Made by a program: the position numbers and the translations under genes. From Perkinsela sp. CCAP 1560/9 (lineage: Eukaryota; Protista; Euglenozoa: Kinetoplastea): 55,264 bases of DNA. The stretch is from positions 1-55,264 of the forward strand of contig CBFFSA010000051.1 of the NCBI GenBank assembly GCA_965644495.1. Reading direction: 5' to 3'. The notes beneath the pieces are model-generated. The model ran no database searches and was not told the origin of the DNA. It saw only the letters and a program-made list of their open reading frames with translations. Within the stretch, counting starts at the first letter, position 1; each line of letters starts with the position of its first letter. This document shows positions 7,301 to 54,900 of this stretch, piece after piece.

Positions 7301-7821
7301 CGTAATGTCTTTTTTTGATAGGATACCATGGAACTACAGTGGTGGTCAGCGACATGTACGCCCCCCTACAGGTTTTGTGGTTTATCCCACTTTAAAAATT
7401 TTCTGTATACCACCGTTTTTCGACCCAATCGTTCCGAATCCGCGTACTTTTCCCACTGGTGAAATCCTGTATCATACACGCTGTACCTAAACTCAAGATT
7501 AAACAGCCAAAAACGCGAAATGTTTTTACAGACTACGATTCATGTGACCCCCCCTTTAAATTTCGCCCAGTTTCACCCGACAAAACCAAATGACTCCAAG
7601 CACTATGTTTTCCAAATCATCGTCACCAAAAAAAGATATGCGGTCGTAGCTCGTCTTTAAGAATCCCTCACAATGAACGCGGGCAACGTGATTTACGGTA
7701 GAACCGCCCACCATTAAAATTTTGAGCTTGAGAAGTCGGTCTTCCCCCAAGTTACTGGACTGGTAGTCCATGAGCTCTTTGGCCATGACATAGCCATCAT
7801 ACACCTTGTGTCTTGTGAAAA

Positions 7822-7849
7822 ATAAAGATACAGTTTCTGTACCTTGTTG
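7822..7849 (+). other. Spliced-leader (mini-exon) 3' segment at the 5' end of the retrotransposon
   Basis: ATAAAGATACAGTTTCTGTACCTTGTTG, compare the T. cruzi SL 3' end GATACAGTTTCTGTACTATATTG. Identical to 11800-11827. Lies 40 nt upstream of ATG 7890. Confidence 0.85.
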
Positions 7850-7889
7850 AATTATTTTTCAATTTTGTACTAAACGTATCTTCCGGAGC

Positions 7890-9560
7890 ATGGCCTCCAA
7901 TGACCCCTTACCTGCTCCTGTCGCGCACGACGATCTCTCTCGAGGATCTGTCAGAGCGAGGCGACACAGTCAAGCGTTTCACTTTAGCAGAAGTCGCGCA
8001 GTATCTATGAAGCTGCGCTTATCAGAAAGCACACTCTGGTCTTACTTTCCTGACACACATGCAGCAGCTGTTTTCCTTACCGAAAAGAGTTTATTCTCGA
8101 GCGTACACACGGCTGAAGCTTCCCTCGGTAAGACCCTCCGAACAGGAGCCAAAAGAGATGATGGCTTAGTCATCGAGAAATGCAACCTGCAAGAAGTTAT
8201 CGATCATGAAGCATGTGACTACGTGGAGTACCGAGAAATACAGGACCCCCATCGAATCGCGAGCTGGGCCTCAGCGTACAGCGACGAACACTTGGATCTT
8301 TGTTCTCACTATGCCTCCGCTCAGACATTTGGAAAGGCAGTTCTGAAGAAACTAAATGGGTGCAACGTACCCGGTCTATCCCATCTTTCAGTACGACATA
8401 TAGCCCCTGTTAACCAAACGGAGAACCAGTCTTGGAACCGATGTTCAATCACATTCGACGCCCCTTACAAAATCAGAGCCGATGATCACTCCCTACCACT
8501 CCTCAACAAACCCGACAAAACTCCCATGCCCTGTGCCCATCGATGCCGCAATAAAGCAACATGCCTACATCCATGCTGCAAAATTATCGACACGACACCT
8601 GCCACCGCAGACCCAACCTTAACAGACGATGTACCTTTCACCCAACCAATGACGACATTCAACCCAAGCACTCCTGTCATGAATCCTGAAAGACGTCCCT
8701 GTCGGCACACATGTCGAGACAAACAGGCATGTGGACATATATGCTGCAAAGTGGGAGTACTCGTTGAACAGAGTACGTCTACGCACACACATCATGAGGC
8801 GCCATCCAGAGCGGGAGTTCCTCATAACCACTTCCCTCCTCCCTTAGTTAACACCCGTAACCACCCCGCTACGCCGTCTGCAGGAATAGAGAGCCCGGGG
8901 TCCGGCGATTCTCGTGCACCCCCATCACCAATACCAACCAATCCTGAGCACGTGAACCTGCGCAACTCGACATCCAACATCCAGTACCGTCCGTGCCTAC
9001 ACCAGTGTAGTGACAAAACGATGTGTAAACATCAATGTTGCAAAACTGGGGTTCGTGTCTCCCCAGAGGAGGCAACGAACTCGAGATGGTCACTAAGGGG
9101 TCTTCTTCCCTGGCCTAACCAAAGTTCCAGTGCCCCGATAACGACGAGGGCCTCGTCAACGGAGAGAAATATCACAGCTGAGACCCTTCGAGACGACGGA
9201 AATAGGCAAAGACAAATCCAGCAAATGGAACACCCAACAAGTAATACAGGACGCGAAACCGGGCTCCCAGAAAGCATACCTCAAAGTACCAGTAGCGGAG
9301 TACTGCAAGGAGAACGACGCCGTCCATGTGCGCATAAATGCAATGACAAGACACAATGCAAGCACGATTGCTGTAAAAAGGGGGTGCTTCTTAAAGCTGG
9401 AGAGATGGTGTGCTCTGCGCTACTATGGACAGCGCGTGGACTCGCTGGTATCCCAGACAACCCTCCGATAGCGCGCGATGCTCCCGTGACAGTCAACTGT
9501 TCGAACCGAATCAACAGAGTCCACGAGAAGGATAAATCACACTCGGGTGAATCCCGGTGA
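7890..9560 (+). pseudogene. N-terminal part of the retrotransposon ORF with four C-x-H-x-C-x-[DN]-K-x2-C-x-H-x-C-C-K zinc fingers
   Basis: CAHRCRNKATCLHPCCK, CRHTCRDKQACGHICCK, CLHQCSDKTMCKHQCCK, CAHKCNDKTQCKHDCCK. Appears to continue by frameshifts into the 9547 and 9761 frames. Confidence 0.8.
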
Positions 9561-9760
9561 ATTCCCAGTGTATGTAATTCCTAAGTCTCCCGAACAGCAA
9601 CAGGTGCAGGAAACCCCGGAAGTTCCCCTTCCATTACCTCTACCAGCCCCCGATACCTCCCTAGCAACACTGCTCCCAGAAACAGTCCTCCGAGCAACGG
9701 CTCCCGATACGACACCTGCGCCAGAATACCAAACAATACTTCAGAGAGTCGCACGAGCTC

Positions 9761-11207
9761 ATGAAGTTACCGAGAGTTCTACACCTACGCCCTCTGAGCT
9801 TGACATTCTGTTGCGGACATCACGCACTATTGCGGGGGGCCGCGCACTGGTGCGCTTCAATGACCAGCAGTGGAGCCAGGTATTATCAAAGATTGAGGTG
9901 CGCTGTAGGGAGTTCCTGCGACCTGCAACGAACGCGGACGATGCACTGCTTAAAGCGGATATACTATCGGCCATACTGTCGGTGTCTGTCTTCGAAATCG
10001 CTCAAGAGATTGACCCTAGGCGAGGTTTCATGCTCCGTACAAACATGGGCCACGCAAAACGCGGATTGCCCACTGGCCATAGACAGAACACAAAAACAGC
10101 TTGTTGCACACATTCGCCAACTAAAACGTTCACTTGCCTTCATGCATGGCGCAGAGCGCAACAAGCAGAGAGGGATGATCAAGCAAGCAGAAAAGGCGCT
10201 GAAGTTCTACGAAGAAGAAGCCACTCTTCAGAAACAAGAAATCGAACGCAGATGGGCCCTCACCCGTTTCCAGCGAAATCCCTGGACAGCCGCTGGTATG
10301 TGTCTGGACAGCCATGAGGAAGAGGCGCATGAACACGGTACAACCTTCCCAACAGCGTCCATGAGTGAAATCGAAACCTTCTTTGCGGAGTCTATGTCTA
10401 AACCCGAGACCAACTATACCATCCCATCCGACGAGTTCCTTGGCCCACGCCCGCTAGAATCCATGAATTGGACAGAAATTGATGCCGGTACTATTGCTGC
10501 TGCATTGGTCTCGAAACGGGCAGGCGCCGCTCCGGGATCAGACACCGTGACGAATGCACTTCTGAAACATTGCTCAAGCATCTACACCTATATCGCACAA
10601 ATTTTTAATGATGTCCTTCAATTCGGTATCTGCCCACTTACGTGGAAAACTGCTGTAACCCGACCGATACATAAAGGTGGCGATCCTAAGCGCATCGAAA
10701 ATTGGAGGCCAATTAGCCTCACCAGCTGCCTTGGAAATCTCTTTCACTCCATTATTGGACACCGAATCCTTCAACACGCCCTGGAGACGAATGCGATCGA
10801 CACAACTATCCAGAAAGGCTTTCTGCCTGGTATGAATGGAACGGTAGAGCACACTCAAGCCCTATGTGAACTCATTGAGCACCAACGAAGCCATAAACGG
10901 CAATACTGTCTTTCCCAGTTCGACATTAAAAACGCATTCGGATCGATCCCTCATAATATTCTCTTCCAGTCTCTCCGTTGGGCCCGCGTCCCCTCACCCA
11001 TCACCTAATACATTGAAAACCTTTACCATAAGGCCTCTCTCCAAATCAAATGCAGTGAAGGACTCACCAAACCAATCGAAGTCGGACGGGGCGTACTACA
11101 AGGTGACACTCTCTCCCCAGTACTATTCAACCTCTCAATGGAGTTGGTGCTGCGTTTTGTCCGGTCTAGCTGTCCAAAATACGGTATTACATGGAACGAC
11201 GACGAGG
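9761..11207 (+). pseudogene. Reverse transcriptase domain (premature TAA at 11006-11008; YADD region lost)
   Basis: Reading through the TAA gives YIENLYHKASLQIKCSEGLTKPIEVGRGVLQGDTLSPVLFNLSME, then an abrupt junction to a repeat at 11208. Confidence 0.85.
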
Positions 11208-11720
11208 TGTCGTTTTTTGAAATTTTCAAAATCTTGATTTTCGAAATCGAGCGCAGGGAAGTGGTAGAGTAGGCCGCGGAGATGACTTTCCACCCCCCAC
11301 CTGGGGGTACCCCCCTGGTACGCGCGGAAGGGGTCCGACAAGGTCAAAAATTCCGAAATTTTTGGGATGACTAAAAAAAATATTTTTTGATCCAAAAAGA
11401 AGCAAAAATATTATTTTTCAAAATCGACTACTAAACCGTATTTGGAAAGTTTCGGACCTCAGCTACCATTTTACGACGTTTTTGTCGACAGATTCGACTC
11501 CTGCCCCTACTGGTAAGGCATCCAAAACAGCCCAAATTGGGTGTAAAATTTCGCAATTTTTGCCGAAAAACCGAGCTGTTTCCCCCAAAAAAGTAGATTA
11601 TTCATGATCTTTTGGCGATTTTTCTTTTTTAGGCTCTTCGTTAAACGCGGTGGTAGTTTTCAACGCGAAGCGCGCAGCATGAGTGACTTCTAAGTTGAAA
11701 ACGAAGAGCCTAAAAAAGAA
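11208..11720 (+). mobile_element. HINE-like repeat, subfamily B, 5'-truncated, inserted in the RT
   Basis: Homologous to 28660-29181. Ends in hairpin H with an internal deletion (GTTGAAAACGAAGAGCC). Confidence 0.85.
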
Positions 11721-11799
11721 ATGGCAGAATTCGAAACTCATTTGGTAAACTTGTTATGTAAACTTTACCCTTATTGGTGAAAGTGAAGTATAAAGAAGT

Positions 11800-12050
11800 A
11801 TAAAGATACAGTTTCTGTACCTTGTTGTTCATCCTTTCTTTCCCCGGCAACGGGCATATTCTTACTGTAATTATATGCTCGTTGCCGGCCGGCACTAAGA
11901 CCGGCATAAAGCACCTAAGAATATGAAACTTGTTGAAGGAAATGGAGGTGCAGCAAGAAACGCCACAGAAGGTACGACGCACTAGGGCCCATGGTGCGCG
12001 GCCGGGTGCATAGGAGCGCGAAGCAAATGATTAGTACAAAAAAGGCTAAA
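11800..12050 (+). mobile_element. SL-headed short element ('spliced' head form); 3' end uncertain
   Basis: SL 3' segment joined directly to TTCATCCTTTCTTTCCCCGGCAACGGGCAT, the same head as the 21180 copy. Stem CCGGCAACGGGCAT/ATGCTCGTTGCCGG. Confidence 0.7.
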
Positions 12051-12058
12051 TTTGCAGG

Positions 12059-13471
12059 ATGCAACATATGGCAATGACTACAGACTCAGGTTACATGACT
12101 CGCCGCCCGCAGATATTGGTCGATGGCGCCCAAATCCCCCACATTTGCGACCAAGGCAGCACATTCTTAGGAATGACACTCGCCCCGGGAGCCCAACAAG
12201 GGAACATTCTCTTCCAAAAGTTGCGGGCCCGCATACGCACGTGGTTACGAAATATATCTAACAGCGCCCACGAACTACCTGCCCGTTTATGGATCTACAA
12301 CAATGGTATTATCTCCCGTCTTCGATACTGCTTTGTTGTGCACGCGTGTCTTAGTTTTAATCACGTCCTGCGCCTTCAAAGGTATGCAACGAATGCGATT
12401 CGGAAATGGCTAAATCTCGCAAAAACGGCTACCAGCGAGCTCTTATACTCCCAACACGGTTGGAACCTCACCAGCCTATCCAAACTTTGGCTCCTCTGTG
12501 CAGCAGAAACGGCGAAACAGATGGAAAAATCCCGCGACCCCGCGGTTCTGCATGCATTGCGCGTCAGGATACGGAGGGAAGAAAACAAACGGTCATCTGG
12601 ACATGTACGCCCACCTTCCGAAATCTACAGCACAGATAGAAGTGAAGTACGAAGAATGATTGGCGAGGAATATGAGAGACACCTCTCCCAAGCAGTACAG
12701 CGCCGTACCTCTGTTGCCGGTCAATGGTTCCGCATAGCAACCGAAGAAGACTTAGCTAAGGACTTTGCCGCAGCACTTTGTGATTTGAAAAGCGAGAGCC
12801 TCTCGCGTTTCACAGCCTCCGTCCTGACACAAACTCCCTTGCCGACACGAGTAGCACTCCGCAAATGGGGAATGTCGAGTCACGTAAACGACGAATGTCC
12901 CATATGTGAAACAGAGCGGCAAAGCACCCGGCACGTTCTCTCTGGCTGCGCGAAATCCTTAGAGCAAGGGAGATACACCCTGCGACACAATATGATCTTA
13001 CTAGCCCTCGCAAACGCTGTAGCGACCTCTCCGTCGACGAATGCGTTCCATTTCGATCTTCCACAGTTTTCCACTGTCCCGACTTGGCTCACGGAATTAG
13101 ATACAGAGCTCAGACCGGACGGGTGGGTAAGGCTGCATAATGGTGAGGAATACATAATAGAGCTAACTTCTCCATGGGAGGAGAACTTTTCACACGCCCA
13201 CGACCGCAAAGTTGCGAAATACTCCAGGTTGTATCATACAAGGAAACTACAACACCCACGCACGTTTCTCTTGGTGTTCGAGGTGGGTGCCAGGGGGAAA
13301 CTTGCTAGCTCCATTCGACCGCTCAACTCTCTTTTTATGGGAGAAAAACATATTGTTTCTGAGTGTCGGAAGGAAATGACGAGAAGTGCCCTGCGTGGCA
13401 GCTTCATCATATTCCAAAAACGCGACTCAAAGACCTGGAACAATGAAACACAGTTTGCTGAGGTCGCCTAA
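12059..13471 (+). pseudogene. RT thumb, CCHC knuckle and RLE (PD-(D/E)xK) endonuclease of the HERO-like element
   Basis: TFLG, IRKWLNL, CPICETERQSTRHVLSGC, RHN, RPDGW, ELTSPWEE, VFEVGARG. Confidence 0.9.
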
Positions 13472-13605
13472 AGGTGAATGGATACCACACGTTCTGTGCG
13501 TGTGTTCTGGACATTTTATTTTCCTGTATCCATTCATAACCAATCTCTGCACTATAAGTGTATGACAAATAAATAAATAAATAAATAAAAAATAGGATGG
13601 AGAAG

Positions 13606-14019
13606 TCCGGGCATAGTTGGCAGACGGTGGGCCTTACAACCTGCAGGTTGGGGGTTCGATTCCCGCTATCGGCAAAACTCGCAACCTGACGGCCTCACTA
13701 CAAAGGGAAAGCGATCAGGAGTGCCTTCAATGCCCACACCCAACACCGCTCCCCTGGAGGACCGACCCGGAACCGCAGAGCTGAACCAGGCTCCAGCGTA
13801 GCCGCTAAATTGCGAGCTGCTTACGCAAAGGAGGCTTGAGACACAACGTACACAATGCAACGCGGTTGGACGCCCGTCCTGGTAGTTGGGTAGCCGTGCT
13901 CGGGCCGCAAGGCGTCGAGTGCCGTCTGGGAAGGGGGTAACAGGACAATGAAGGTCGGTGACCTGAGACTCTACCCCAACGGTTGGCGCTGCAGAGCCCT
14001 CCGTGTCTTCTTCTTCTTC
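13606..14019 (+). mobile_element. tRNA-derived SINE (copy 1)
   Basis: A-box GGGCATAGTTGG, B-box GGTTCGATTCC (13653-13663), (TTC)4 tail, TSD GGAGAAG (13599-13605 / 14020-14026). Confidence 0.8.
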
Positions 14020-14279
14020 GGAGAAGGTACTCGTGACGTTCCACGTAAAGTACTACGATCAATACGTGCTCAGTTTTTACACGGTCAATTCCTGCTTCAC
14101 TAGGAGTTCTTTGATGATTCTAAAAGCCTATAAAATTATAAAAACTGTTAAAACAAATATCAATGTCGAAAGGATACGCCAACAAGGACTAAATTGTGAT
14201 GCTTTTAAAAATGAGTTATCCCTGATTCGAAGAACTTGAAAATTTTTTTATCGAAATATTATTACCATCTTTCAATCTT

Positions 14280-14885
14280 ATGTCTTTACCTGTTCCTTTT
14301 CACTTCGCTCTCTTTTCTGCAAGAGACGCTCCTCGGACTCGCCCTTCCAAGGTGAGCAGCGCTATACAACCTCCAGCGTTTCTTCTGGAACGATTCCTCG
14401 CCCATCTTGGAAACGCGTCTGCCTCATGGAATACTCACACCCCGGTTTGTACGTGGGAAGGGGTGATATGTGATAAAACGGAACACGTACAAACAGTAGA
14501 ACTAGGGGCTCACAGTTTATCCGGATCTCCAGCATGGGGATTTCTACCAGAGTCATTATCTATCTTGAATCTTTCTCATAACAAGTTAAGCGGAACAGTA
14601 GACTTCGATAGTTTTCCTATGCAGTTAACAAAATTAGATTTGGGTCAAAATAGCTTCACAGGACATGTGACATTTTTAAGCTTGCCACAGACATTACGAT
14701 ATCTCGACCTTTCACACAATGAATTTACTGGGTGCGATGCTTTGACGACGATCCGTGTAGGCTTACGAGAAATGTACATTAACCACAATCTTCAACTTAT
14801 TGGTTTTGTTGATGTACCAAAACTTCCAAAAAGTTTGGTGCATCGTTCATGGCAACATACCCAAATTGAGGCGAAATGGATCTAG
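14280..14885 (+). CDS. Short leucine-rich repeat protein
   Basis: WNTHTPVCTWEGVIC cap; LSHNKLSG, LGQNSFTG repeats. Confidence 0.9.
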   Translation: MSLPVPFHFALFSARDAPRTRPSKVSSAIQPPAFLLERFLAHLGNASASWNTHTPVCTWEGVICDKTEHVQTVELGAHSLSGSPAWGFLPESLSILNLSHNKLSGTVDFDSFPMQLTKLDLGQNSFTGHVTFLSLPQTLRYLDLSHNEFTGCDALTTIRVGLREMYINHNLQLIGFVDVPKLPKSLVHRSWQHTQIEAKWI

Positions 14886-15213
14886 AATGCACATGAAGAA
14901 ATATTGTGATCAAAGTATATTTTTTCGACGATAAGTTTTGTATACATGGAAACTTTTTTCACCTATTCTTCTTATTTATCTCCTCAGTTTCCTGATAATT
15001 TGTGTCTATAGAATTGGTGAGTTGCTTATTTTAAAGATGAAACGCTAGAACAGCTCGTAGTCTCAGTCACTGCTGTATGGCATACAATAAATGTATGGCG
15101 TACAATAAATAATCAACGTTTTTGACAGTTATTTGTATCTTAGCTTACGACAAGAGCTGGAAAAATGTAAGGTCGATCCAATAGCGGAAATCTACTGCAT
15201 TCGATTGTACATT

Positions 15214-15876
15214 ATGAAGCTTTGTTTGGTGGAGATATTTTTAACTTTTGTTACCCGTGAACTCAGCTTAGTACCTATGTCCGACTGCGCCGCCACACAT
15301 TCTGGTCATAAAGTACGGAGCATAATGCTTCCTGTGGAAATTCAAATCTCTCTATTCTTTCGAAATGTTAGTAATCCAGATTCAACGTGGAAGGAAACAA
15401 ATCCGCTTCACGCGTGGAATGGCATGTCCCTGGATAGAGAGGATGGATCTTTCCACGAACTTAATGCAAATTATAGGCGTCTGAGGGGCACATTGAGCTG
15501 GGAAAACCTCCCGCGGGAGATTAAGCAGATTCAGTTACAAGGGAATCATTTTGAGGGGCACGTAGACTGTTCCTATCTTCCTTTGAACTCATCGTTAATC
15601 TATTTGAATCATAATCATTTTACAGGCTCTATAGATTTGACATCCCTTCCTGCTTTACTGGTATACTTTTGCCTTAATTCGAATTATTTCAGTGGGGAAC
15701 TCAATTTCAATCATCTGCCCTTAGGCTTGCAATGGCTGTGGCTTCATCGAAACCAATTCACAGGCATAGTACAGCTTGATAATATTCCGAAAACAATGAC
15801 AGAGATACTTCTCAAAGAAAATAAATTCATCGGTGTGTTAGATCTGCGTGTTCTTCCAAATTGTTTGACGTTCTAA
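15214..15876 (+). CDS. Short leucine-rich repeat protein
   Basis: LNHNHFTGSIDLTSLP repeats. First ATG at 15214 (track ORF from 15133). Confidence 0.88.
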   Translation: MKLCLVEIFLTFVTRELSLVPMSDCAATHSGHKVRSIMLPVEIQISLFFRNVSNPDSTWKETNPLHAWNGMSLDREDGSFHELNANYRRLRGTLSWENLPREIKQIQLQGNHFEGHVDCSYLPLNSSLIYLNHNHFTGSIDLTSLPALLVYFCLNSNYFSGELNFNHLPLGLQWLWLHRNQFTGIVQLDNIPKTMTEILLKENKFIGVLDLRVLPNCLTF

Positions 15877-16217
15877 TAATTCATTCAGCGAAATAATCGG
15901 CGAGCACAACAGTATGAAGACTTGAGCACTCCTTAAAGTGGTATTCGTACCACATACAGTACTCTCCTTACATACAGTATCACTGGTGTCGACTTAACGG
16001 CACTATACAAAGTGCCGTTAAGTAGGAGCACTCAAATTTTCAAAGATATTTACAAAAAATAATTTGAGGGAGCAAAAGTCCCTTTTGACCGAGTTTACCC
16101 GTAGTGAACCGTAGTGATTCACTACGGGTAAATTCCGGGGCATGTTAAGTCGTACCCCAGTTTAGGACTCTATCATTGAATGATTATGCTTCGCTAATTT
16201 CTTGTAAACTTAATCTA

Positions 16218-16775
16218 ATGGCCTCAGTTCCGATCTCTGATGAATCTATTCAAGCCCCTTCTTCCCCTTATTACCGTATTCGACCGCATACGTACCACAG
16301 TTTTAAGCCTTCTCGCCCAGTAGCAGTTAGCAGCAACTACAATGCGCATAGAGACTCCTGTCCTGCACAACGTCAGAATGAGCAGCCATCACTTTTGTGT
16401 GACATGCGTCGTCTTATTGCCGGCGAATATTATTACTGCGACACCGCGGAAAGGGAGGAAGGACGGACCCTTTCAGGTCCCTCGGAGGATACAATTTTGA
16501 TCCAAGTTGCAAGTGTGGATGTACGTCAAGGTAGGGTGCGTGTGCGTCCATGCTACAAAGTTCGGGCGACACCTCGCGGTGCTGAAAGCAAGTTCCACGA
16601 CTATACCAGATCAGAGTCTACCTCACCTGTAGTAGAAGTACACTCCGAGACATTTACGGTGCCTTCTTCTGCTCTACTGCGAACGCCTCGTCCATGTGTT
16701 CTAGACGCGTTACAAGTTCGAGACACTTTTGTTGATGCATATGGTTGCTTTGATAGCAAGTGGATGTCTATTTAG
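16218..16775 (+). CDS. Hypothetical protein
   Basis: 185-codon ATG ORF co-oriented with neighbours; no motif recognised. Confidence 0.55.
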   Translation: MASVPISDESIQAPSSPYYRIRPHTYHSFKPSRPVAVSSNYNAHRDSCPAQRQNEQPSLLCDMRRLIAGEYYYCDTAEREEGRTLSGPSEDTILIQVASVDVRQGRVRVRPCYKVRATPRGAESKFHDYTRSESTSPVVEVHSETFTVPSSALLRTPRPCVLDALQVRDTFVDAYGCFDSKWMSI

Positions 16776-16939
16776 TTATCAAAGAATGTATTGATTTTTT
16801 TTGTTCTTTTGAAGACAGTTGCAGTAGTGTATAGGATAACTGTATTTCACCCATAGCACTATTTGTGCACTGCATGTGAAATACGTACACCTACATTTTG
16901 AGCCTATTATTGGTCTTTTTTCACCATTACTCTCCAGCA

Positions 16940-17407
16940 ATGCCCCATGTACCCTGTACCCCCGCGGGTCTTACTTCTACCCCACGTCGTATACACCTCG
17001 CCTTTCCTTCCATTCTCCTATTCAGCCTCCTCGCCGTGTCCCACATCCGCACCTCCCAACCTTACAACGCCCCACAAACCACCCCCACCACCATCCCCGA
17101 TCTCGATCTCACTGACCCCTTCACCGGACCCGATCTCTTCTCCATCCACGCCCAATGTGCGGCATTCCTCCGACGTGATTTCGTCTCCCCCGAAAAAAAG
17201 ATCGCCTCGATGCAAGATTCTTCATCTTCTAAAAAATGTCCCTTTTCTTCTTCTTCTTCTTCTTCCCCGAAAAAAATCCTAAACCCACCCTCCTCAACCT
17301 TAACCCATGATCCCTCTTCACAAGAAGCCTCCTCTTTTTTCCACCACCCTACCACCACAACCCCCTCGGCCTCCTTCGTCCCCTCCCCTCTCCCTTTTCA
17401 ACAACAA

Positions 17408-17442
<35 letters not shown>

Positions 17443-19336
17443 AACCCTAACACAAAAGAGGAAACAAAAACTACAAAGACAACGACACCAACAAACGACT
17501 TCTTCCTCTTCTTCCCCCCCGCCCGGCCCCCTGCTGGTTCTCCCCGGGCTGCTGGGCTCCGTGCTGGAGGAGAAGCGGACCGCCGCGACGGGTCTCCCCT
17601 TCGAGTGCGCCCGCACCCTGGACTGGACCATCGCCTGGGTCAACGTGCGCTCCATGACCCTCTCGTACCGGTGCTGGTCCCGGACCATGCGGCTGGTGGT
17701 GAGGAGGGGGGAGGGGGAAGATAGGGAAAGAAATGAAAATAAAGGAAATGAAAATAAAGATAAGGAAAAGGAAAATAAAAGTTATGAAAATAAAGAAAAG
17801 GAAGATAAAGAAAAAGAAAGGAATAAAAGCAATGAAAATAAAAGTCATGAAAAGGAAAATAAAGGCAACGAAAATATAAGTCATGAAAAGGAAAACAAAG
17901 GTAACCCCCACACTTTTAGTTTTAGGGCTGAGTTTCCCCCGGGGGTTGAGGTTCGCCCTCATCAAGATACCGTCCATGCGGTGCGGTGTCTTGATCCCTC
18001 CAATGGGGCCTCCTGTGATGCGACAAAATATTTTCATGATTTTTTTGTGGCCATCACGGACCCGAAGGAGATGCAGCAGACCTTTGGGAGGGGTACGGTG
18101 CGGGTGTGGGAGAACCCGACGTGTTATGCGGTAGAGGCGACGGGGAGTCCGGTGGTTCCGGTACGGGTGAACTACACGGAGGCGTTGAATGTGACGGAGG
18201 GATTACAGAACGCGCAGGGAAGACCAGGGCTCAAGAAAAAAACAAACGGCACGGAGAGTAAGGAAAAGAAGGAAAGTAACCGGTATGGGGCGAAAACACG
18301 AACGCTGCCTCCGATTCCCGCGTATCAACTTCGTCCGTATACGGTGAAACATAATTTAGATGTGGTGCCGTATGATTTTCGTCTTGGGGTCGCGGATAAG
18401 TACAAGCATTTTGGTCCCGGGAACGCCTATGGGGGGTATTTTATCGAGGTCAAGCAGCGTGTGGAGCAAATGTACAGAGATAATGGAAACGCAAAGGTGA
18501 CGCTTTGTGGGCACAGTCTCGGAGGTACCCTGGCGGTTCTGTTTTTAAACACCTATGTGGATCAGAAATGGAAGGATACGTACATTGCTCGGCTGATCTC
18601 GGTCGCCGCCCCCTATGCGGGGACAATGAATGCGCTACAAGCGGCCGTGGTAGGGGAGAACGTAGGCTCCCCGCTTCCGTTGTGGACGCTACAACCGTTG
18701 ATCGCGACCTGGCCAGGTATGTACATGCTGTTTCCCATGTTACACAACGCCACAGCGCACATTTGGTCTCCCGATCGTGTACTGATGCGTATCGGAACCG
18801 AGACCGCACGAGCAAAAACATTACTTCAAAAATCTTCCGAAAAATCAAATTCAAAACCAGATACCAACTCCCAATCCTTAAAATCACCCCACAAAGGGTG
18901 CATTATGAATTTCTCCGACAAACCCACCCAGCCCCTCCGGGAGTACACCGTACGGGACCTCCCCCAGCTCGTGCGGGACATGCCCCACATGGAGGACATC
19001 TACGGTGACCTCCTCGAGAGCCTCCCCGCGAGTGCTAACTATTACTCCCCCCCGGGGGTCCCTGTGGATTGTATCTACAGCAACGGGGTACGCACCACGG
19101 ACCGTATTGAGATTGACAGCACGGCGGACAGTGACCGGTACAACCCGCGGCTGCACACGACCCAGGAGGGGGATGGCACTGTGACCTTTGGCAGCCTGCA
19201 GCTGTGTAGCCGCTGGGGGGGCGAACAGCGGCAGGAGGTCAAAACGTTCTTTTTCCCCGGGATTGACCATGTAGAGATCATGGCGGGTCACCCGGAGGTG
19301 TGGCGGTTGATTTATCAACGTGTGAATGGGGCGTAG
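16940..19336 (+). CDS. LCAT / group XV phospholipase A2-family acyltransferase with low-complexity insertions
   Basis: LLVLPGLLGSVLE, PYDFR, GHSLGG nucleophile, GDGTV, DHVEI; N-terminal hydrophobic segment; polyQ and E/N/K tracts. Confidence 0.9.
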
Positions 19337-19599
19337 GGGGTGGAAAAAGGAAGTGCGGTGTGTGAGACCCCCGGGGGAATACGGTGTAGTGGCGCTGTGT
19401 ATGAACTCTTCATACTATGAAGTGTGGAGTTGTGAATTCAAGGACTCCGCCCGTTGTTTTGTAGAATATGTGTAGGATAGGTGTGGTTCGTTGTCTGGAT
19501 TTTGTGCAGCTACTACAAAATTGTACTCAGGAGTTTCTTTGTTTGTCTTAAATCTATTATTGCTATTTAAAAAGGGCTTTTACTAAACACTCTTTTAAA

Positions 19600-20211
19600 A
19601 TGTGTGCTCCACTCTTTGCGATGATGGTTCACGGTAGTGATGCAGAACGTGCAAAAGTACGCCCCGGTCGTATTCGGGGTTCATTTCTTTCTCAGGAATT
19701 TCTAATGGCTCAACTTGTTGCGAAGTTTGAACTACTCGACGACGACTCGTGGAAAGAGGACGTTCCGGTATGTAAATGGTATGGAGTTGATTGTAATGAT
19801 GATGGCAAAATAATCGAGATAAATTGGGATCACGTTCTCTCGTACGGAGAGTTTGATTTCTCACTTTTACCCGCCACGTTGATTCGCCTAAGTCTTTCGA
19901 AAATGTTTGATGATGATCTTTTTACTGGGTGTCCCGACTTTACTCTTCTTCCAAACGACATGCATTATTTGGACATTTCCGGAAACGCGTTTTCTGGGAC
20001 ACCAGACTTCACACGATGTCCTGCTGGATTAACCTACGTGGATCTCTCAGATAATTGTTTTTCTGGTGAAATATCTCTAGGTCGTCTTCCCAGTACTATA
20101 AAAACAGTATCGCTTGCTTACAATGGCAGCCTTTCTGGACATGTGTCTCGTTTTTTAGCTGCCCGAATAATGAGCGTGAACATTGAAAGCACGAAGATAA
20201 CAATAATTTGA
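19600..20211 (+). CDS. Short leucine-rich repeat protein
   Basis: PVCKWYGVDC cap; LDISGNAFSGTPDF repeats. Confidence 0.9.
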   Translation: MCAPLFAMMVHGSDAERAKVRPGRIRGSFLSQEFLMAQLVAKFELLDDDSWKEDVPVCKWYGVDCNDDGKIIEINWDHVLSYGEFDFSLLPATLIRLSLSKMFDDDLFTGCPDFTLLPNDMHYLDISGNAFSGTPDFTRCPAGLTYVDLSDNCFSGEISLGRLPSTIKTVSLAYNGSLSGHVSRFLAARIMSVNIESTKITII

Positions 20212-20249
20212 TATTGCGATAAGAGGAAGAATGCTGATAGACGCATCTA

Positions 20250-21604
20250 AACGGGGGTGCGGATTATTATTGCATTTTGGATTATTATTGCATTTCGGTT
20301 TATTATTGCACTTTCGGATTATTATTGCATTTTACACATTATTATTGCACTTTCGGATTATTCTTGTATTTCGGATTATTATTGCATTTCACTTTTCGGA
20401 TGGATAATTTATTTAAAGAAGGGGCTATTCGGCATCGGGAACAAGCCTCTGATTTTGTATAAACGGTGGACACAGACGGAGAATGTGTATCACTGAAAGG
20501 GGACGAAGGTGCCGTAGATGAACTTGGAGTCGAAGAAGATATGAGCAATCTCGATACCTACTCTATCCGTGAAGGGTTGCTTCGTTAAGAAAGCAGCGAC
20601 CTAGAGAAAATGAGTGACCTTGAGGAAGGATCCATAGATCATTGTTTATTCATGCACTTAGAGTGCAGAGATTTGCCTCACATTGTCCTTACCCGCATAC
20701 GACGGGTGGATCACGTGAGGATTTGCCCTCGCTGGAGGAGAATGGGTGCAGAGAGCTGACGTCCCAGGTGCAGAGAACTCGGTTGTCATGTGCAGGTGCA
20801 GAGAGCCGGTTGCGTAATCTCCATATTACAGTTTCGGGGGCAATCCGGGTGCAGAGAGCTGTGACAGAGCCGAGGTGCGGAGAGCTGGGCGACCGTCAGG
20901 TGCGGAGAGCCGTAAACGCGGGCAGCGAGGGACACGTCTAGTGGTCCTCAAGGGAGGCCACCGTGACTCCTAGCCCTCTCGGAGAGGTAAGGGTCGCGAG
21001 GAAAGAAGCCGAGAGAGGGAAGCACTCACTCCAGGGGAGTGAATCGGGGAGGGGTGAAGGGATGAAGGAGCGTCCTCTGCTTCAGCGATAAAGAGGGACA
21101 GTTCCAGCCTTAGCGCCGGCCAGAAACGGGCATGAAAATACAGTAAGGGTATGCCCGTTGCCGGGGAAAGAAAGGATGAACTAAGGTTAAGTACCAACAA
21201 GGTACAGAAGCTGTATCTTTTTGATAGCGTGCATTATCCAGGAATCCCACTTAAACCTTGTATACCTCAGAATGAGATCGCCTCTGATAGTGCAAGCACA
21301 CCCGATGTCATTGGACATAAACGACGTCATGTCAAGGATAACTACCGTGCATGCAGGCCCAAATCAGAAAATAAAGATCGCGGATACCGTGTGGACGTGC
21401 CAGCAGAAGTAAATCGTTGCGTTTATTCTTCAAGAGGGGCATTTTTACTTTTGCTTTTTGCGGGGAGAACATGTGACAATGCAACAATAATGTGCTTGCG
21501 GATTATTATTGCATTTCGACCACTTGCGGATTATTATTGCACTGCAATAGCTTATTGCACTACAATAGGCCTATTGCAGTGCAACAATAATCCGCACCCC
21601 GGTT
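20250..21604. mobile_element. TA-flanked TIR element with subterminal GGATTATTATTGCA repeat arrays (host of the SL-headed SINE)
   Basis: TA|AACGGGGGTGCGGATTATTATTGCA ... TGCAACAATAATCCGCACCCCGGTT|TA. Confidence 0.8.
20645..21230 (-). mobile_element. SL-RNA-headed non-autonomous retroelement (SINE-like partner of the HERO-like LINE)
   Basis: Minus strand starts ACGCTATCAAAAAGATACAGCTTCTGTACCTTGTTG|GTACTTAACCTTAG|TTCATCC. Ends AATCTCTGCACTCTAAGTGCATGA-ATAAA, 22/24 identical to the LINE 3' end 13542-13565. Confidence 0.8.
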
Positions 21605-28468: not shown

Positions 28469-29181
28469 TTGCGGTGGTTGTATAACTACCGCTCTACCCT
28501 CGATTATTGCGAACAAAGTGAACAAAAAAAGTGAAAATATAAAGAGGAACACAGTAATATAATAGAAGAAAAATATAAAAGGGGGCCCCGGTGGTCCAAA
28601 ACTGAAAAAAAAAATCAAAAAAATGGGGGGTCTAGGGGGGGTCCAGGGGGGGGGCATACGTCGTTTTTTGAAATTTTTAAAATCTTGATTTTCGAGATCG
28701 AGCGCAAGGAAGTGGTAGAGTAGGCCGCAGCGATGACTCTCCACCCCCCCACCTGGGGGTACCCCCCCCCCTGGTAAGCGCGGGAGGGGTCTGACAAGGT
28801 CAAAATTTCCGAAATTTTTGGGATGACCAAAAAAAAAAGAAATTGACCCAAAAAAAGTAAAAATATTATTTTTCCAAAATCGACTCCTAGAACGTATTCG
28901 GAGGGTTTGGGACCTCAGCTACCATTCTACGATGTTTTTGTCGACAGATTCGACTCCTGCCACTACTGCTAAGGCATCCAAAACGGCTCAAATTCGGTGT
29001 GAAATTTTGCAATTTTTGCCGAAAAATCGAGCTTTTGCACCCCAAAAAGTAGATTATTCATGATCATTTGGAGATTTTTTTTAGGCTCTTCGTCAAACGC
29101 GGCGGTAATTTTCAACGCGAAGCGCGCAGCATGAGTCACTTCTACGTTGAAAACAACCACCGCGTTTAACGAAGAGCCTAA
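28469..29181 (+). mobile_element. Full-length HINE-like element (5' module C, body B, hairpin H)
   Basis: Starts TTGCGGTGGTTGTATAACTACCGC (imperfect hairpin); ends with hairpin H containing the complement CAACCACCGC. Confidence 0.85.
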
Positions 29182-51990: not shown

Positions 51991-54900
51991 GTTCACCATG
52001 GGTGCATATTTGGCTAGAGGTTACCGATTTAAGTTTGCGCTGCATTTTGCTGCCATTAGAATCACCGTTGGTATGGTTTTTGCGCTTGTCTTCTGCATGA
52101 GGAATCTCGCCGTAGAATCTCAAAGCCTTTTCTCCCTTGCTTATTTTACTTGCTTGTTTAGCCACCCAGTCTGCCATATAATTATGTGGATTTTCGTTAT
52201 GCGCTTTAACTTTTACGCAGTAGAAGCGCTTTGTCCATCTTAGCGAAATATATGTTTCTTGCAATTTCTGAAGTATAGCGCCTCCCTCAAATGATTTAAA
52301 TCCTATGAATCTGAACCTATGGATAGCTCCATGAAAGAAATCCCAAACATACTCAGAATCCGTGTGCAAAATGACATCTCCGTCGTAGGACAATGCGATG
52401 AGAAGAGCCTCGTGCGCGGCAAAGGATTCTATTTCCTGAATAGATTGAGAGAATTCATGAGGAGGTTTTAACCCAAGAGATATAGAGGGCCCGCGGCGGG
52501 GCAGACTACCCTACAACCTGTGTGAGTTTCATCCTTTTTAACGATTCGTGCTCCATCTGTATAAATGTGTGTTTCATTTGGCCCGATTGGAAATGGTTGC
52601 CGCCCTTCTTCAATGTATTGTAGGGTTTCGTAGCACCCCTTGTTTACCCCCTTTACCAAAAGATTTTCCCATAGTTTTGAGGTTGTTTTAGTGTACGAGG
52701 GTCTGGGTTCAAGCTGATTTTGAAGATTTTCAAGTTTCTTGCACCATTGAGACCGATTTTGACCAAGTTTTAGAATCTCAGATACGTCAGAATGTAACTC
52801 TTTTGCACATTTTTCTGATAGCGAGGGCTTGGAACTCTCATCATTCGTTCTCCATAGTACGGCAGTTACGAATGGAGTAGGGTGACGAATAAGGTGGCCT
52901 ACTAGCGAGGCACGTTGCAATTGTATCACAGTATTGGGCTTTAGGTCAGTGGGGTAAAGAGAGTCTACTCTGCAATGCGCCTCTTTCGAGCACTTGACTC
53001 CCAACATGACCCTCCTCATTCTGTTCATTTGGACTTCCACTTCATGTAGCTCTATCTTATTTAAATTCCAAGTCCCTGGATTATAATAGACCACTGATTG
53101 AACGAGAGACTTAAAGATGTGTAATTTGCTTTTTGGTGATATAGTAGAACTCCATATGGCTTTGAGTTTGTGCATTATTGCCCAACCTAATCGTACACTT
53201 TCTTGTGAGTTTGAGCTGCGATCCTCCTCGTTCTGAGTGCTACCCAAGTAGCGATAATATGTAACTTTTGGTATTTTTTTTTTGTTTGACTTTTGGTATA
53301 TCGCCGAGTGTCACTACTTGCAAAGGTCTTCCATCATCCTTAACTTTACCTAGTGTCATCCGTGCCGTTTTGTTTGGTCCGACATTTATTTTCAAATTAG
53401 CTTTTTCTGCGGAAGTTTTAAGTTTGTGCAACATTGTGCTTAGCTCCTCCTTGGGTTCGGAGAAGAAAACTATATCATCAGCATAATTTATATCAGATAC
53501 ACGCAGTTCCTTTAGGCCTCTGCTCCTAGTTCCTGAGCTATGTGTAACAAGCCCTAAGCGATTTATGTCGATAGATTCAACTAAAATACGATCAAGAACC
53601 ATAATAAACAGGTATGGGGCCAGAACGTCACCTTGAAGAGTCCCCTGTAAAAGTGGAAATGAGTCTGTATTACCGTATGGTGTTTTCACGTGCGATTTGA
53701 GATTTTGATAAATACACATGACCGTAGAACTGAGATTTTCGGGAATATCGAAAGCACGTAATGTCTCTTTTATCGCAGCGAATGATAATGAAGGAAAGGC
53801 TTGTTGAAAGTCGACGAAACAGACGAACACCCCAGCCCCTCGGCGTGATTTTTCCATTATTTCTAAAAACGTTGCCTGAGCGCCAGCTGTTGAGCGGTTT
53901 GGTCGAAAGCCGAATTGATTCCCGCGAAGCGAACTTTCCACTGCTGGTTGTATTCTGTCTAAATTGATTCGATTCAAAATCTTCACTACATGATTCACAA
54001 GACAGATTGGTCTCCAATTTGTGAGTGAGCGCAAGTTACCTTTCTTTGGCAACGGGACCTGCAATATCGATTTCCAAGATTCATCCGCTTTTCCGGTTTT
54101 TCGTACTTCGTTCATTATATCCAGGAGATCATTACGCAAGTCTTGATCAGCTGAAATAGCACGTAGAGCTTCAATCGGGATATGATCATCGCCTGTAGCT
54201 TTTCCTGACTTAATCTTTACCATCGCAGCAGTTAGTTCCTCCACTCGAAATTCACCATCATCAATTTTTGCCAGTCGTTTTGGTGCAGTAGGTAAACTTA
54301 TTGCTTCATGACCTTTGTAAGCACTACCCCCTACCATGCTGAAATGATTCTTCACTATATTAAGGCTGCTGTTTACAGTAGTTGAAACTAGCGGAAAATC
54401 TTGCTTCTTGTCCCCTACAATTTTTCGAATTGTTCTGTACGCGGATTTTGGAGTTGATTTAAGCTCTTTTTCCAGGGCGTCGCACTCATTTATAATAGAG
54501 GAGCCTAGCTTTTCAGAGAATTCTTTTCATGCAGTAGCAAACATAGTTTTATTACCCACAATCTTCAGCAGAGACTTCATGTCAAATCCGGATAGATCTG
54601 TTTCAGCATCAATGCGAATTTCTTTTGCGTTACTAGTTTTCTTAGGCAGACTAGATGCGGCCACTCTAACAGCAGAAGAGGGTCTTGTCCAAGATATTTC
54701 GCTGGCCTTATCTATTTCCATTTTTGGCGCGTTTTCGGACTTCTGATCCTCCGACCGAATTCTTTTTGGCACAGATTTTAAAGATTCCTTTACTTTCGAA
54801 ACAAACTTATTTCGGATTTCATCATTTTTCAATGCCTCCCAAAAAGGCTTTTGTTGAGACAGTTTTTGATTTTTCCATCGAAAATTGAAGTTCGATGTCA

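What the first reader, a model, noticed from the sequence alone, without database searches (positions are those of the whole stretch)
7822..21230. Spliced-leader-capped LINE/SINE system: an RLE retrotransposon and a non-coding partner both start with the SL exon and share a 3' hairpin
Seen: the HERO-like LINE begins with an SL 3' segment (7822-7849) 40 nt before its ATG and ends AATCTCTGCACTATAAGTGTATGA+(TAAA)n. A 586-bp non-coding element (21230->20645, minus) begins with an almost complete SL exon and ends AATCTCTGCACTCTAAGTGCATGA+ATAAA. That is 22/24 identical, with the TGCACT/AGTG(C/T)A stem kept. Established: SINEs borrow the 3' tail of their partner LINE, and the known kinetoplastid RLE elements (SLACS, CZAR, CRE) insert INTO SL genes rather than carrying an SL head at dispersed sites. 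Inference: a dispersed retroelement family is capped by host trans-splicing, and an SL-derived SINE class is mobilised by it. I know of no described equivalent in kinetoplastids.
Basis: partly seen in the sequence, partly recalled or inferred. Interest (0 to 1): 0.92.

Follow-up and report, generated by a model that had tools for sequence, protein, structure and literature searches.

The report
Retrotransposon pair headed by spliced leader
In this kinetoplastid-type genome an R2-like jumping gene and a short non-coding partner both start with a DNA copy of the cell's own spliced leader and end in the same small hairpin, so both were copied back from leader-carrying RNA by the same enzyme; I found no report of this for this group, though the scan has met it elsewhere in this genome.

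Summary
The motif is the host spliced leader (SL): 8 SL RNA genes read ...CTTTAACGATAAAGATACAGTTTCTGTACCTTGTTG|GTATGAG.

- **The LINE.** Window 7822-13565 is a dead copy of a dispersed R2-type (RT + CCHC + restriction-like endonuclease) LINE. Its first 28 nt are SL nt 11-38, joined at the exon end to the 5'UTR.
- **The SINE.** It runs 21220->20642 (579 bp), not 21230->20645. It belongs to a family of more than 40 copies.
- **The shared tail.** Its ATCTC-hairpin-TGA tail matches the LINE's (22/24), and the stem covaries across 15 LINE and SINE tails.
- **The SL stays canonical.** In 16 independent LINE copies the SL 20-mer has 2/320 mismatches, while the adjacent 160 nt are only 74% alike.
- **Leader addition recurs.** The evidence is SL|TTCATCC junctions behind a PPT-AG at several places in the SINE tree, 13 stacked relic SLs, and heads starting at nt 9-23 within one young burst.

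Insertion into SL genes (CRE/SLACS style) is rejected. "HERO-like" could not be tested. No acceptor AG was found at the main junctions, so how these are kept is open. No read data were available. Earlier scan notes report the same phenomenon on other pieces of this genome.

The parts
7822..7849 (+). SL head of the LINE: 28 nt equal to SL nt 11-38, ending exactly at the SL exon's 3' end
   Evidence: SL genes; the empty-site flank homology stops at 7820.
7850..7889 (+). LINE 5'UTR (AATTATTTTTCAATTTTGTACTAAAC...GGAGC), pyrimidine-rich with a TACTAAC-like motif conserved across subfamilies
7890..11227 (+). LINE coding region, first part. It is broken into frames 3 (7890-9509), 1 (9676-10065) and 2 (10070-11227). 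It holds four CxHxCx5CxHxCC knuckles and then the RT.
   Evidence: tblastn against the 1561-aa relative P0151; Pfam RVT_1.
11228..12052 (+). Nested insertion that replaces about 36 codons. It holds an abundant ~495-bp repeat (11209-11702) and a second SL head (11800-11827) joined directly to the 5' part of the SINE (TTCATCC...).
   Evidence: The twin copy C1:3745578-3745699 has 122 bp here.
12053..13471 (+). LINE coding region, last part: RT thumb, CCHC zinc knuckle and PD..E..K restriction-like endonuclease
   Evidence: invariant C41 C44 H53 C58 R70 H71 P114 D115 E129 K145; model pLDDT 87.7; the top 7 PDB matches are all R2.
13542..13565 (+). LINE 3' box and hairpin: AATCTC-TGCACT-ATA-AGTGTA-TGA
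13566..13592 (+). A/T-rich tail CAAA(TAAA)n
20642..21220 (-). SINE-A copy, 579 bp, non-coding
   Evidence: Family of 45 matches among 207 candidates; ends from the alignment and from empty site C12:274945-274948.
21195..21220 (-). SL head of the SINE: 26 nt equal to SL nt 13-38, with one private T>C change
21181..21194 (-). GTACTTAACCTTAG: a 14-nt pyrimidine-rich segment ending in AG. It is missing from the short-junction copies (SL|TTCATCC), such as the one at 11828.
20745..20909 (-). Six internal copies of CTCTC(T/C)GCACC, the 5' half of the tail box
   Evidence: 6 matches against 0.19 expected, all inside the SINE.
20650..20673 (-). SINE 3' box and hairpin AATCTC-TGCACT-CTA-AGTGCA-TGA, followed by ATAAACAA (20649->20642)
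   Evidence: (59 genomic hits, control 0).

Best explanation
The LINE is a dispersed non-LTR retrotransposon of the R2 superclade, with a single long ORF carrying RT, a CCHC knuckle and a PD-(D/E)xK endonuclease. Its RNA, made inside the host's long transcripts, carries the host spliced leader at its 5' end.

Its reverse transcriptase starts at a nick in the target. It starts on a conserved 3' signal, ATCTC plus a 5-7 bp hairpin plus TGA plus a short A/T-rich tail. It then copies the RNA towards the cap, usually stopping 8-22 nt short. New DNA copies therefore begin with the 3' 16-30 nt of the SL, fused at the exon boundary to the element.

The 579-bp SINE has no coding capacity. It carries the same 3' signal and also bears an SL, so the same enzyme copies it in trans.

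- **Shown:** identity of the SL; position of the junction; dispersed insertions with empty sites; the R2-type enzyme; the covarying hairpin shared by LINE and SINE; repeated, independent re-addition of SL to transcripts of SL-headed DNA copies.
- **Inferred:** that the spliceosome adds the SL; that the hairpin is what the RT recognises; that this LINE subfamily is the SINE's driver.
- **Open:** how the main junctions (SL|AATTATTT in the LINE, SL|GTAC in the SINE) are kept, since no copy has an AG acceptor there.
For: **The SL is the host's.** Eight SL RNA genes have the exon followed by GTATGAG, one as a tandem pair beside a 5S gene.

**The heads are dispersed and the junction is exact.**
- 521 genomic SL hits, control 0.
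- Upstream flanks are all different, and the body follows directly after ...CCTTGTTG.
- Empty paralogous sites exist for the SINE and for the LINE.

**The enzyme is R2-type.**
- RVT_1.
- Best solved relatives are R2Bm and R2Tg, E 1e-34.
- CCHC, RH and PD..E..K are invariant in 21 relatives.
- The C-terminal model has pLDDT 87.7, and its top 7 PDB matches are R2 with probability 1.00.

**The tail is shared and structured.**
- 22/24 identity between LINE and SINE.
- Across 15 tails from at least 6 LINE lineages and 2 SINE families, ATCTC and TGA are invariant.
- 5 of 6 stem pairs show compensatory change. 93% of cells pair, against 72% in shuffles; 0/500 shuffles reach the covariation score or the % paired, and 22/500 reach the count of pairs changed on both sides.

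**The SL does not drift with the element.** In 16 independent LINE heads the SL 20-mer has 2/320 mismatches. The next 160 nt average 73.6% identity.

**SL addition recurs.**
- Short junctions SL|TT(C/A)ATCC, directly behind CTTTTTCCTTAG, sit at two to three separate places in the SINE tree.
- There are 11 + 2 stacked forms, with a new SL joined after CAG or AAAG of an older DNA-borne SL; control 0. One of them, L047, is identical in body to a normal copy.
- Within one young SINE burst (branch lengths 0-0.008) heads start anywhere from nt 9 to 23.
- A sister SINE family has a head reaching CTTTAACG.

**Copies with long ORFs are SL-headed too.** Two hold the full ORF (L091, L092); in the other four the gene call starts downstream of the head.
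Against:
- No copy with AG directly before AATTATTTT...GTAC or before GTACTTTTTCCTTAG was found in the 21 Mb searched. All 37 copies of the latter are preceded by (G)TT[GC]. The expected splice acceptor for the principal junctions is therefore missing.
- Three other junction variants (L066, L071, L035) follow AA, not AG, in their long-form relatives.
- Only 3 LINE copies in this assembly carry the SINE-A type stem. No LINE with the SINE-B stem was seen.
- The hairpins are short, and folding z-scores are weak for 4 of the 5 tails folded.
- TSDs are mostly absent, so integration details are not established.
Confidence: 0.8

Rival explanations
1. Few-master inheritance. The SL was captured once or rarely per lineage and is now simply part of the element's DNA. 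A handful of source copies with a full-length DNA-borne SL supply all RNAs, for instance copies sitting behind an SL-gene-type promoter or another fixed start. On this view ongoing trans-splicing is a side-show.
For: No AG acceptor is found at the main junctions in 21 Mb. The SINE keeps G|GTA after the SL, as the SL gene does. SLACS-type relatives are known to use the SL gene promoter (from memory; PMC12278014 covers only their insertion site in SL genes). Five copies of another family share an identical upstream stack of SL pieces, so DNA-borne SL can be inherited (L013-L017).
Against: The SL 20-mer shows no subfamily-specific variants across lineages that differ by 26% next door. About a quarter of the young SINE copies (3 short junctions and 1 stacked, of 16) demonstrably come from re-spliced transcripts of SL-headed copies. 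Only two loci carry the gene-type upstream sequence CCCTTGTTAACTTT, and both are true SL genes. Among full-length heads none had an SL-gene upstream followed by an element body.
Confidence: 0.15
2. The SL is added by the reverse transcriptase, not the spliceosome. The RT jumps from the element RNA onto an SL-bearing RNA or onto the free SL exon, either within the homologous DNA-borne SL stretch or end to end.
For: This would explain junctions with no AG. It would also explain heads longer than most DNA copies, and the 5'-piece-plus-full-SL stacks and the poly(A)|SL joints seen in other families. End-to-end template jumping is a known property of R2 RT (from memory).
Against: Every junction ends exactly at the last exon base and never includes intron bases. 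The free SL exon is a rare intermediate. The best-documented new junction lies right behind a polypyrimidine tract plus AG, as a spliceosomal acceptor would. The stacked relics begin right after internal AGs.
Confidence: 0.07
3. The SINE's head comes from an SL RNA gene (exon plus the start of the intron). It would then be an SL-RNA-derived SINE rather than a trans-spliced RNA.
For: All three SINE families read ...TTG|GTAC, keeping the exon|GTA boundary of the gene. The chance of this is about 1/64.
Against: Beyond GTA there is no similarity between the SINE 5' module and the SL intron: local alignment score 14 against 13.4 +/- 2 in shuffles. There is no Rfam match. The same body also occurs with the SL joined 8 or 14-15 nt further in.
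Confidence: 0.08
4. CRE/SLACS/NeSL-style site-specific insertion: the SL next to the elements is target DNA from SL genes.
For: The kinetoplastid RLE elements known so far insert in SL genes (PMC12278014). The heads often start near SL nt 11, close to the CRE insertion point.
Against: The SL lies 5' of the element and ends at the exon's last base. There is no SL 5' part or promoter upstream, no intron downstream, and every copy has a different flank. The empty sites are not SL genes.
Confidence: 0.01

Closest known systems
CRE clade (SLACS, CZAR, CRE1/2) of kinetoplastids
   Same: A single-ORF non-LTR element with RT, a zinc knuckle and a restriction-like endonuclease in a kinetoplastid-type host, whose biology is tied to the spliced leader (PMC12278014).
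   Different: CRE elements sit inside SL RNA genes at a fixed position and end in poly(A). These are dispersed: in LRR genes, other repeats and a (GT)n tract. They carry the SL as their own 5' head, joined at the exon end, and finish in a box-hairpin plus a short A/T tail. Phylogenetic relation was not testable.
R2 elements (Bombyx, zebra finch; solved structures 8gh6, 9dou)
   Same: They are the best sequence and fold matches. R2 RT recognises a structured 3'UTR, and the 5' end of R2 RNA is cut out of a host co-transcript.
   Different: R2 targets 28S rDNA and frees its 5' end with an HDV-like ribozyme. Here the 5' end is the host SL and the targets are many. The N-terminal region has CxHxCx5CxHxCC knuckles. 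No C2H2 or Myb domain came up in Pfam.
Stringent LINE/SINE pairs sharing a 3' stem-loop (eel UnaL2/UnaSINE1, Kajikawa and Okada 2002; from memory)
   Same: The SINE and its partner LINE share only the terminal stem-loop and a short repeat tail, which the RT is thought to recognise.
   Different: The SINE head is not a tRNA, 5S or 7SL Pol III gene but the host SL. The tail box is also repeated six times inside the SINE.
Relic DinoSL retrogenes of dinoflagellates (PMC6050394, PMC7245778, PMC5585692)
   Same: DNA-encoded SL at the 5' end of retro-copies, and stacked relic SLs that begin after an internal AG, showing re-use of SL-headed copies.
   Different: In dinoflagellates it is described for host genes. 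Here whole retrotransposon lineages and their SINEs carry it as a constant terminus, in Euglenozoa.
L1Tc/ingi with Pr77 (trypanosomatids; PMC1874656, PMC3185411)
   Same: A kinetoplastid LINE and its short partners (NARTc/RIME) share a conserved 5' module that solves the 5'-end problem within polycistronic transcription.
   Different: Pr77 is an internal promoter plus ribozyme that gives unspliced RNA, and the endonuclease is APE-type with a poly(A) tail. Here the 5' module is the SL itself.

Membership tests
RLE-type (R2-superclade) non-LTR retrotransposon | Reverse transcriptase domain of the non-LTR type | tested here: met
   RVT_1 E 1.9e-33 in the 1561-aa relative and 5e-10 in the window piece. 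R2 proteins are the best PDB sequence hits.
RLE-type (R2-superclade) non-LTR retrotransposon | CCHC knuckle followed by a PD-(D/E)xK endonuclease C-terminal to the RT, with no APE domain | tested here: met
   Invariant C,C,H,C,RH,PD,E,K columns. The model's top 7 PDB matches are R2. No PF03372 in P0151, P0157 or P0170.
CRE clade (SLACS/CZAR/CRE) | Insertion at one fixed position inside SL RNA genes | tested here: not met
   Flanks are unrelated to SL genes, and the empty sites are other repeats.
CRE clade (SLACS/CZAR/CRE) | Poly(A) 3' end | tested here: not met
   Tails are hairpin plus TGA plus (TAAA)n, (AT)n or TAAAACA.
CRE clade (SLACS/CZAR/CRE) | RT groups with the CRE references in a phylogeny | not testable with these tools
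   No named CRE, HERO, NeSL or R4 sequences could be obtained. The searches returned unnamed proteins or R2-labelled ones.
HERO clade | RT groups with the HERO references in a phylogeny | not testable with these tools
Same reason.
SINE mobilised through its partner LINE's 3' end | Short, non-coding, multi-copy, with defined ends and insertion polymorphism or an empty site | tested here: met
SINE mobilised through its partner LINE's 3' end | 3' end shared with an autonomous LINE of the same genome | tested here: met
   22/24 with the window LINE. The same box-hairpin frame appears in all LINE lineages sampled.
SINE mobilised through its partner LINE's 3' end | Head derived from a Pol III gene (tRNA, 7SL, 5S) with an internal promoter | tested here: not met
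   No tRNA and no Rfam hit. The head is the SL. In this respect it works like a SINE but is not a classical one.
SINE mobilised through its partner LINE's 3' end | Demonstrated trans-mobilisation by the LINE protein | not testable with these tools
   Needs an experiment.
SL-relic retro-copies (dinoflagellate type) | DNA-encoded SL at the 5' end, joined at the exon's last base, outside SL genes | tested here: met
SL-relic retro-copies (dinoflagellate type) | Stacked relics: a new SL followed by an older SL truncated after an internal AG | tested here: met
   11 cases of CCTTGTTG|TTTCTG... and 2 of CCTTGTTG|ATACAG..., controls 0.

The most novel reading that the evidence does not exclude
The SL head is not a passive scar. 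It is an obligatory 5' module that these R2-type elements keep canonical without any splice acceptor at the junction. It might be renewed by switching of the RT onto cellular SL-bearing RNAs within the DNA-borne SL stretch, or by source copies captured behind SL-gene promoters. Either would be a new way for a non-LTR element to define and renew its 5' end in a genome that lacks gene promoters. The SINE would exploit both ends of the system, the SL head and the hairpin tail.
Probability: 0.25. Interest if true: 0.85.

Novelty: new variant of a known kind. Interest (0 to 1): 0.66.

Why it matters
Non-LTR elements must make an RNA with exact ends from inside someone else's transcript. R2 does this with a ribozyme, L1Tc/ingi with Pr77, and SLACS with the SL gene promoter. 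Here a whole clade of R2-type elements and their SINEs appears to use the host's trans-splicing for that job, and the copies record it in DNA.

This gives a natural marker of retrotransposition through mature RNA in a kinetoplastid-type genome. It also gives a clean LINE/SINE pair with a covarying 3' recognition hairpin, and a concrete puzzle to test: how is the leader kept when the acceptor is lost on insertion?

The SINE family is very young, with near-identical copies, and often lands in LRR genes. It may therefore still be shaping surface-gene families.

Tried and rejected
- **Read evidence.** Nothing about transcripts is shown.
- **Genome letters.** Later genome work used coordinates and printed matches only.
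- **RNA families.** Rfam gave no match for the SINE. ARAGORN found no tRNA in the window.
- **SL intron against SINE 5' module.** No similarity.
- **Source copies with an acceptor.**
  - AG|GTACTTTTTCCTTAGTT: none.
  - AG|AATTATTTT(N)CAATTTTGTAC: none.
  - All 37 copies of the SINE junction word are preceded by the SL end.
- **Internal LINE acceptor.** Copies spliced just before the ATG (SL|CATG...): none.
- **SL-gene upstream sequence before an element.** Only the two true genes carry it.
- **TSDs.** Absent in most SINE copies; one of 12-14 bp.
- **A 14-nt GT..AG cis-intron.** This was considered as the origin of the short junction. It was thought unlikely because of its size. Trans-splicing at the same AG gives the same product, and sequence alone cannot tell the two apart.
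- **SL versus body polymorphism in the SINE alone.** Underpowered (Fisher p = 0.56); the first five columns of the SL block are flank in the 5'-truncated copies. The LINE heads gave the clear result.
- **Literature.** A full-text search for the SL string gave no paper. Searches for SL-headed retrotransposons in kinetoplastids found only the dinoflagellate retrogene work and CRE/Pr77 papers.
- **Clade assignment.** Cluster look-ups gave no names or organism, so neither the clade (HERO/CRE/NeSL/R4) nor the species was established.

Full report
**What is in the window**

Positions 7822-7849 read ATAAAGATACAGTTTCTGTACCTTGTTG. A 40-nt leader and the ATG at 7890 follow. The same 23-mer core occurs at 11805-11827 (+) and, with one change, at 21217->21195 (-). 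Shuffles gave none.

The 24-nt tail AATCTCTGCACT(A/C)TAAGTG(T/C)ATGA occurs at 13542-13565 (+) and 20673->20650 (-), again with none in shuffles.

**Is it the host's spliced leader?**

In the 21-Mb assembly that holds the window, the 23-mer occurs 521 times with up to one mismatch. The reversed control occurs 0 times.

Eight places continue ...CCTTGTTG|GTATGAGAAG, and all eight read AACGATAAAG upstream. One is a 297-bp tandem pair. There the exon is followed by two stem-loops and a T-run, and a 5S rRNA gene lies about 0.5 kb away. This is the anatomy of SL RNA genes.

The exon is ...CTTTAACGATAAAGATACAGTTTCTGTACCTTGTTG. Its first one to three bases differ between genes (TAA or GAG before CTTTAACG), so my numbering (38 nt from AACTTT) is provisional.

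**The LINE**

The copy at 7822-13565 is dead. Against a 1561-aa relative it runs in frame 3 (7890-9509), frame 1 (9676-10065) and frame 2 (10070-11227). A nested insertion follows at 11228-12052, and the frame then resumes (12053-13471).

A second copy, at C1:3742176-3747212, is 98.6% identical over the first 2 kb. It has different flanks, and it differs by a 9-bp and a 2-bp indel. It has 122 bp where the window has 842 bp. Paralogous sites on C3 and C2 lack the LINE and the neighbouring tRNA-like SINE, with 18 nt between the flanks.

Relatives with long ORFs were fetched from a second public assembly. They encode a single protein of about 1500-1600 aa.

- Pfam finds RVT_1.
- The best solved relatives are R2 proteins, E 1e-34.
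- In an alignment of 21 C-terminal regions, C41, C44, H53, C58, R70, H71, P114, D115, E129 and K145 are invariant.
- A model of that region has pLDDT 87.7. Its seven best PDB matches are all R2, with probability 1.00.

It is therefore an R2-superclade element with a restriction-like endonuclease. Whether it is HERO-, CRE- or NeSL-like could not be tested, because no named references were obtainable.

**The SINE**

The minus-strand element is one of a family: 45 matches among 207 candidates, 84-95% identical. Copies align from AAAGATACAG to ...GCATGA(T/A)AAA(A)CA.

A paralogue of the surrounding sequence on C12 lacks the element, with 2 nt between the flanks. This places the ends at 21220 and 20642, 579 bp.

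The body has no ORF of 100 aa or more on its own strand and no Rfam or tRNA match. It holds six internal copies of CTCTC(T/C)GCACC, the first half of the tail box, against 0.19 expected.

**The shared 3' signal**

I collected tails from the window LINE, from six further LINE lineages and from two SINE families. All read ATCTC, then a hairpin, then TGA, then a short A/T-rich run. The stems differ:

- TGCACT/AGTGCA
- TGCAGT/ACTGCA
- TGTAGAA/TTCTACA
- TGCGC/GCGCA
- TAGTGA/TCACTA

On 15 tails, 5 of 6 pairs show changes on both sides. 93% of cells pair, against 72% in shuffles. For percent paired and covariation score, 0 of 500 shuffles reach the observed value; 22 of 500 reach the count of pairs changed on both sides. 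Slid controls give at most 66%. The hairpin appears in every minimum-energy fold, although it is too short for strong z-scores.

The SINE-A stem matches only the window's LINE subfamily, which has three copies here. This is the pattern of a stringent LINE/SINE pair. That the RT reads the hairpin is inference.

**Why the SL head came through RNA, and more than once**

1. The junction is always the last exon base. It is never intron and never SL-gene upstream sequence, and every copy has a different flank.
2. In 16 independent LINE heads from several subfamilies, the 160 nt after the SL are on average 73.6% identical (minimum 56.5%). The SL 20-mer has 2 mismatches in 320 positions, both private. 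A neutrally inherited segment would have diverged.
3. Most SINE copies read SL|GTACTTTTTCCTTAG|TTCATCC. A few read SL|TTCATCC or SL|TTAATCC, the SL being joined right behind that pyrimidine tract and AG.
   - They carry the diagnostic bases of different subfamilies and sit at two to three separate places in the tree.
   - The head at 11800-11827 in the window is of this kind.
4. Eleven places read ...CCTTGTTG|TTTCTGTACCTTG and two read ...CCTTGTTG|ATACAG.... Each is a new SL joined after an AG inside an older, DNA-borne SL; controls gave 0. One such SINE copy, L047, is identical in body to a normal copy. SL-headed DNA copies are therefore themselves transcribed, spliced again and reinserted, as with relic DinoSL in dinoflagellates (PMC7245778).
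5. Within one burst of near-identical SINE copies, heads begin anywhere from nt 9 to nt 23. A sister SINE family has a head reaching CTTTAACG. So the template RNA carried more SL than most DNA copies do.

**What remains unexplained**

After insertion the SL replaces whatever acceptor preceded the element. I found no copy with AG before AATTATTTT...GTAC or before GTACTTTTTCCTTAG. All 37 copies of the latter are preceded by the SL end. This covers only the 21 Mb reachable here; scan notes count over 300 pieces for this genome.

Three minor junction variants follow AA, not AG, in their long-form relatives.

The principal junctions must therefore be kept in one of three ways. Source loci may lie outside this sample. 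Sources may have a DNA-borne full SL and a fixed start. Or the RT may switch onto SL-bearing RNAs. Earlier notes of this scan left the same point open. My additions are:

- about a quarter of the young SINE copies demonstrably result from re-splicing;
- head length is re-sampled at each insertion;
- no acceptor-bearing source exists in this part of the genome.

**Comparison with what is known**

- Kinetoplastid RLE elements described so far (CRE, SLACS, CZAR) sit in SL genes at a fixed site and end in poly(A) (PMC12278014). Both features were tested here and not met.
- L1Tc/ingi use the Pr77 promoter and ribozyme (PMC1874656, PMC3185411).
- SL relics on retro-copies are established for dinoflagellate host genes (PMC6050394, PMC5585692).
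- LINE/SINE pairs sharing a 3' stem-loop are known from vertebrates (from memory).

Full-text searches found no report of retrotransposons or SINEs headed by the SL in kinetoplastids or diplonemids. I rate it a new variant of known kinds. The scan's own earlier notes describe the same phenomenon on other pieces of this genome. I re-tested it independently here.

Noticed in passing
window 13599-14026: A tRNA-like sequence (T-arm GGTTCGATTCC) lies a few bases after the LINE tail. ARAGORN calls no tRNA. It is absent together with the LINE from the paralogous sites on C3 and C2. Other first-reader notes call it a tRNA-SINE.
   Followed up: partly
window 11209-11702 and 28660-29154: A very abundant ~495-bp repeat (885 candidates genome-wide, 83-91% identical) that ends in a ~40-bp palindrome. 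One copy is nested in the LINE. At C14:217648-218340 the same repeat is followed by the same SL plus SINE-5' fragment at 95% identity.
   Followed up: partly
window 53288-54328 (-): A second, distant RT-coding stretch, 24% identical to the LINE relatives.
   Followed up: no
L008-L017, L078-L090; G000:C30:274-11698; G000:C1:2477645-2492945: Other SL-headed families carry an almost full-length SL and are preceded directly by poly(A) runs or by partial SL pieces. Some form head-to-tail arrays with periods of about 2.28 kb and 5.09 kb. They look like concatenated cDNAs.
   Followed up: no
G000, 144 places; e.g. L078-L090: Unrelated element bodies begin with the same AATTATTT(T)(T)C directly after the SL, in 144 exact cases. 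SL|GTAC occurs in 94. The shared motif is unexplained.
   Followed up: partly
L008-L030, L078-L086: In near-full-length dispersed SL heads the base before CTTTAACG is T in 13 of 22. The SL genes seen have A or G there. It may be another SL gene variant or a misreading at a modified cap-proximal base.
   Followed up: partly
L002 (G000:C1:659819-662841): The SL RNA gene pair lies next to a 5S rRNA gene (99 bits). Each 297-bp unit also holds a tRNA-like stretch on the other strand.
   Followed up: partly
L095 (ENA ERZ24900291 ctg3877l): A more distant SL-headed LINE lineage (42% aa identity) has (GT)n on both sides. This suggests a microsatellite target.
   Followed up: no
flanks of L045, L047, L056, L058, L091, L092: Many SINE and LINE copies lie in leucine-rich-repeat coding sequence, and several SINE copies sit directly behind another element's tail. 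This agrees with an earlier scan note on LRR targets. I made no statistical test.
   Followed up: no
window 7866-7889 and LINE heads in L061-L077, L091-L094: The LINE 5'UTR keeps a TTTGTACTAAC motif (it looks like a branch point), then pyrimidines and an AG just before the ATG. No genomic copy with the SL joined at that AG was found.
   Followed up: partly
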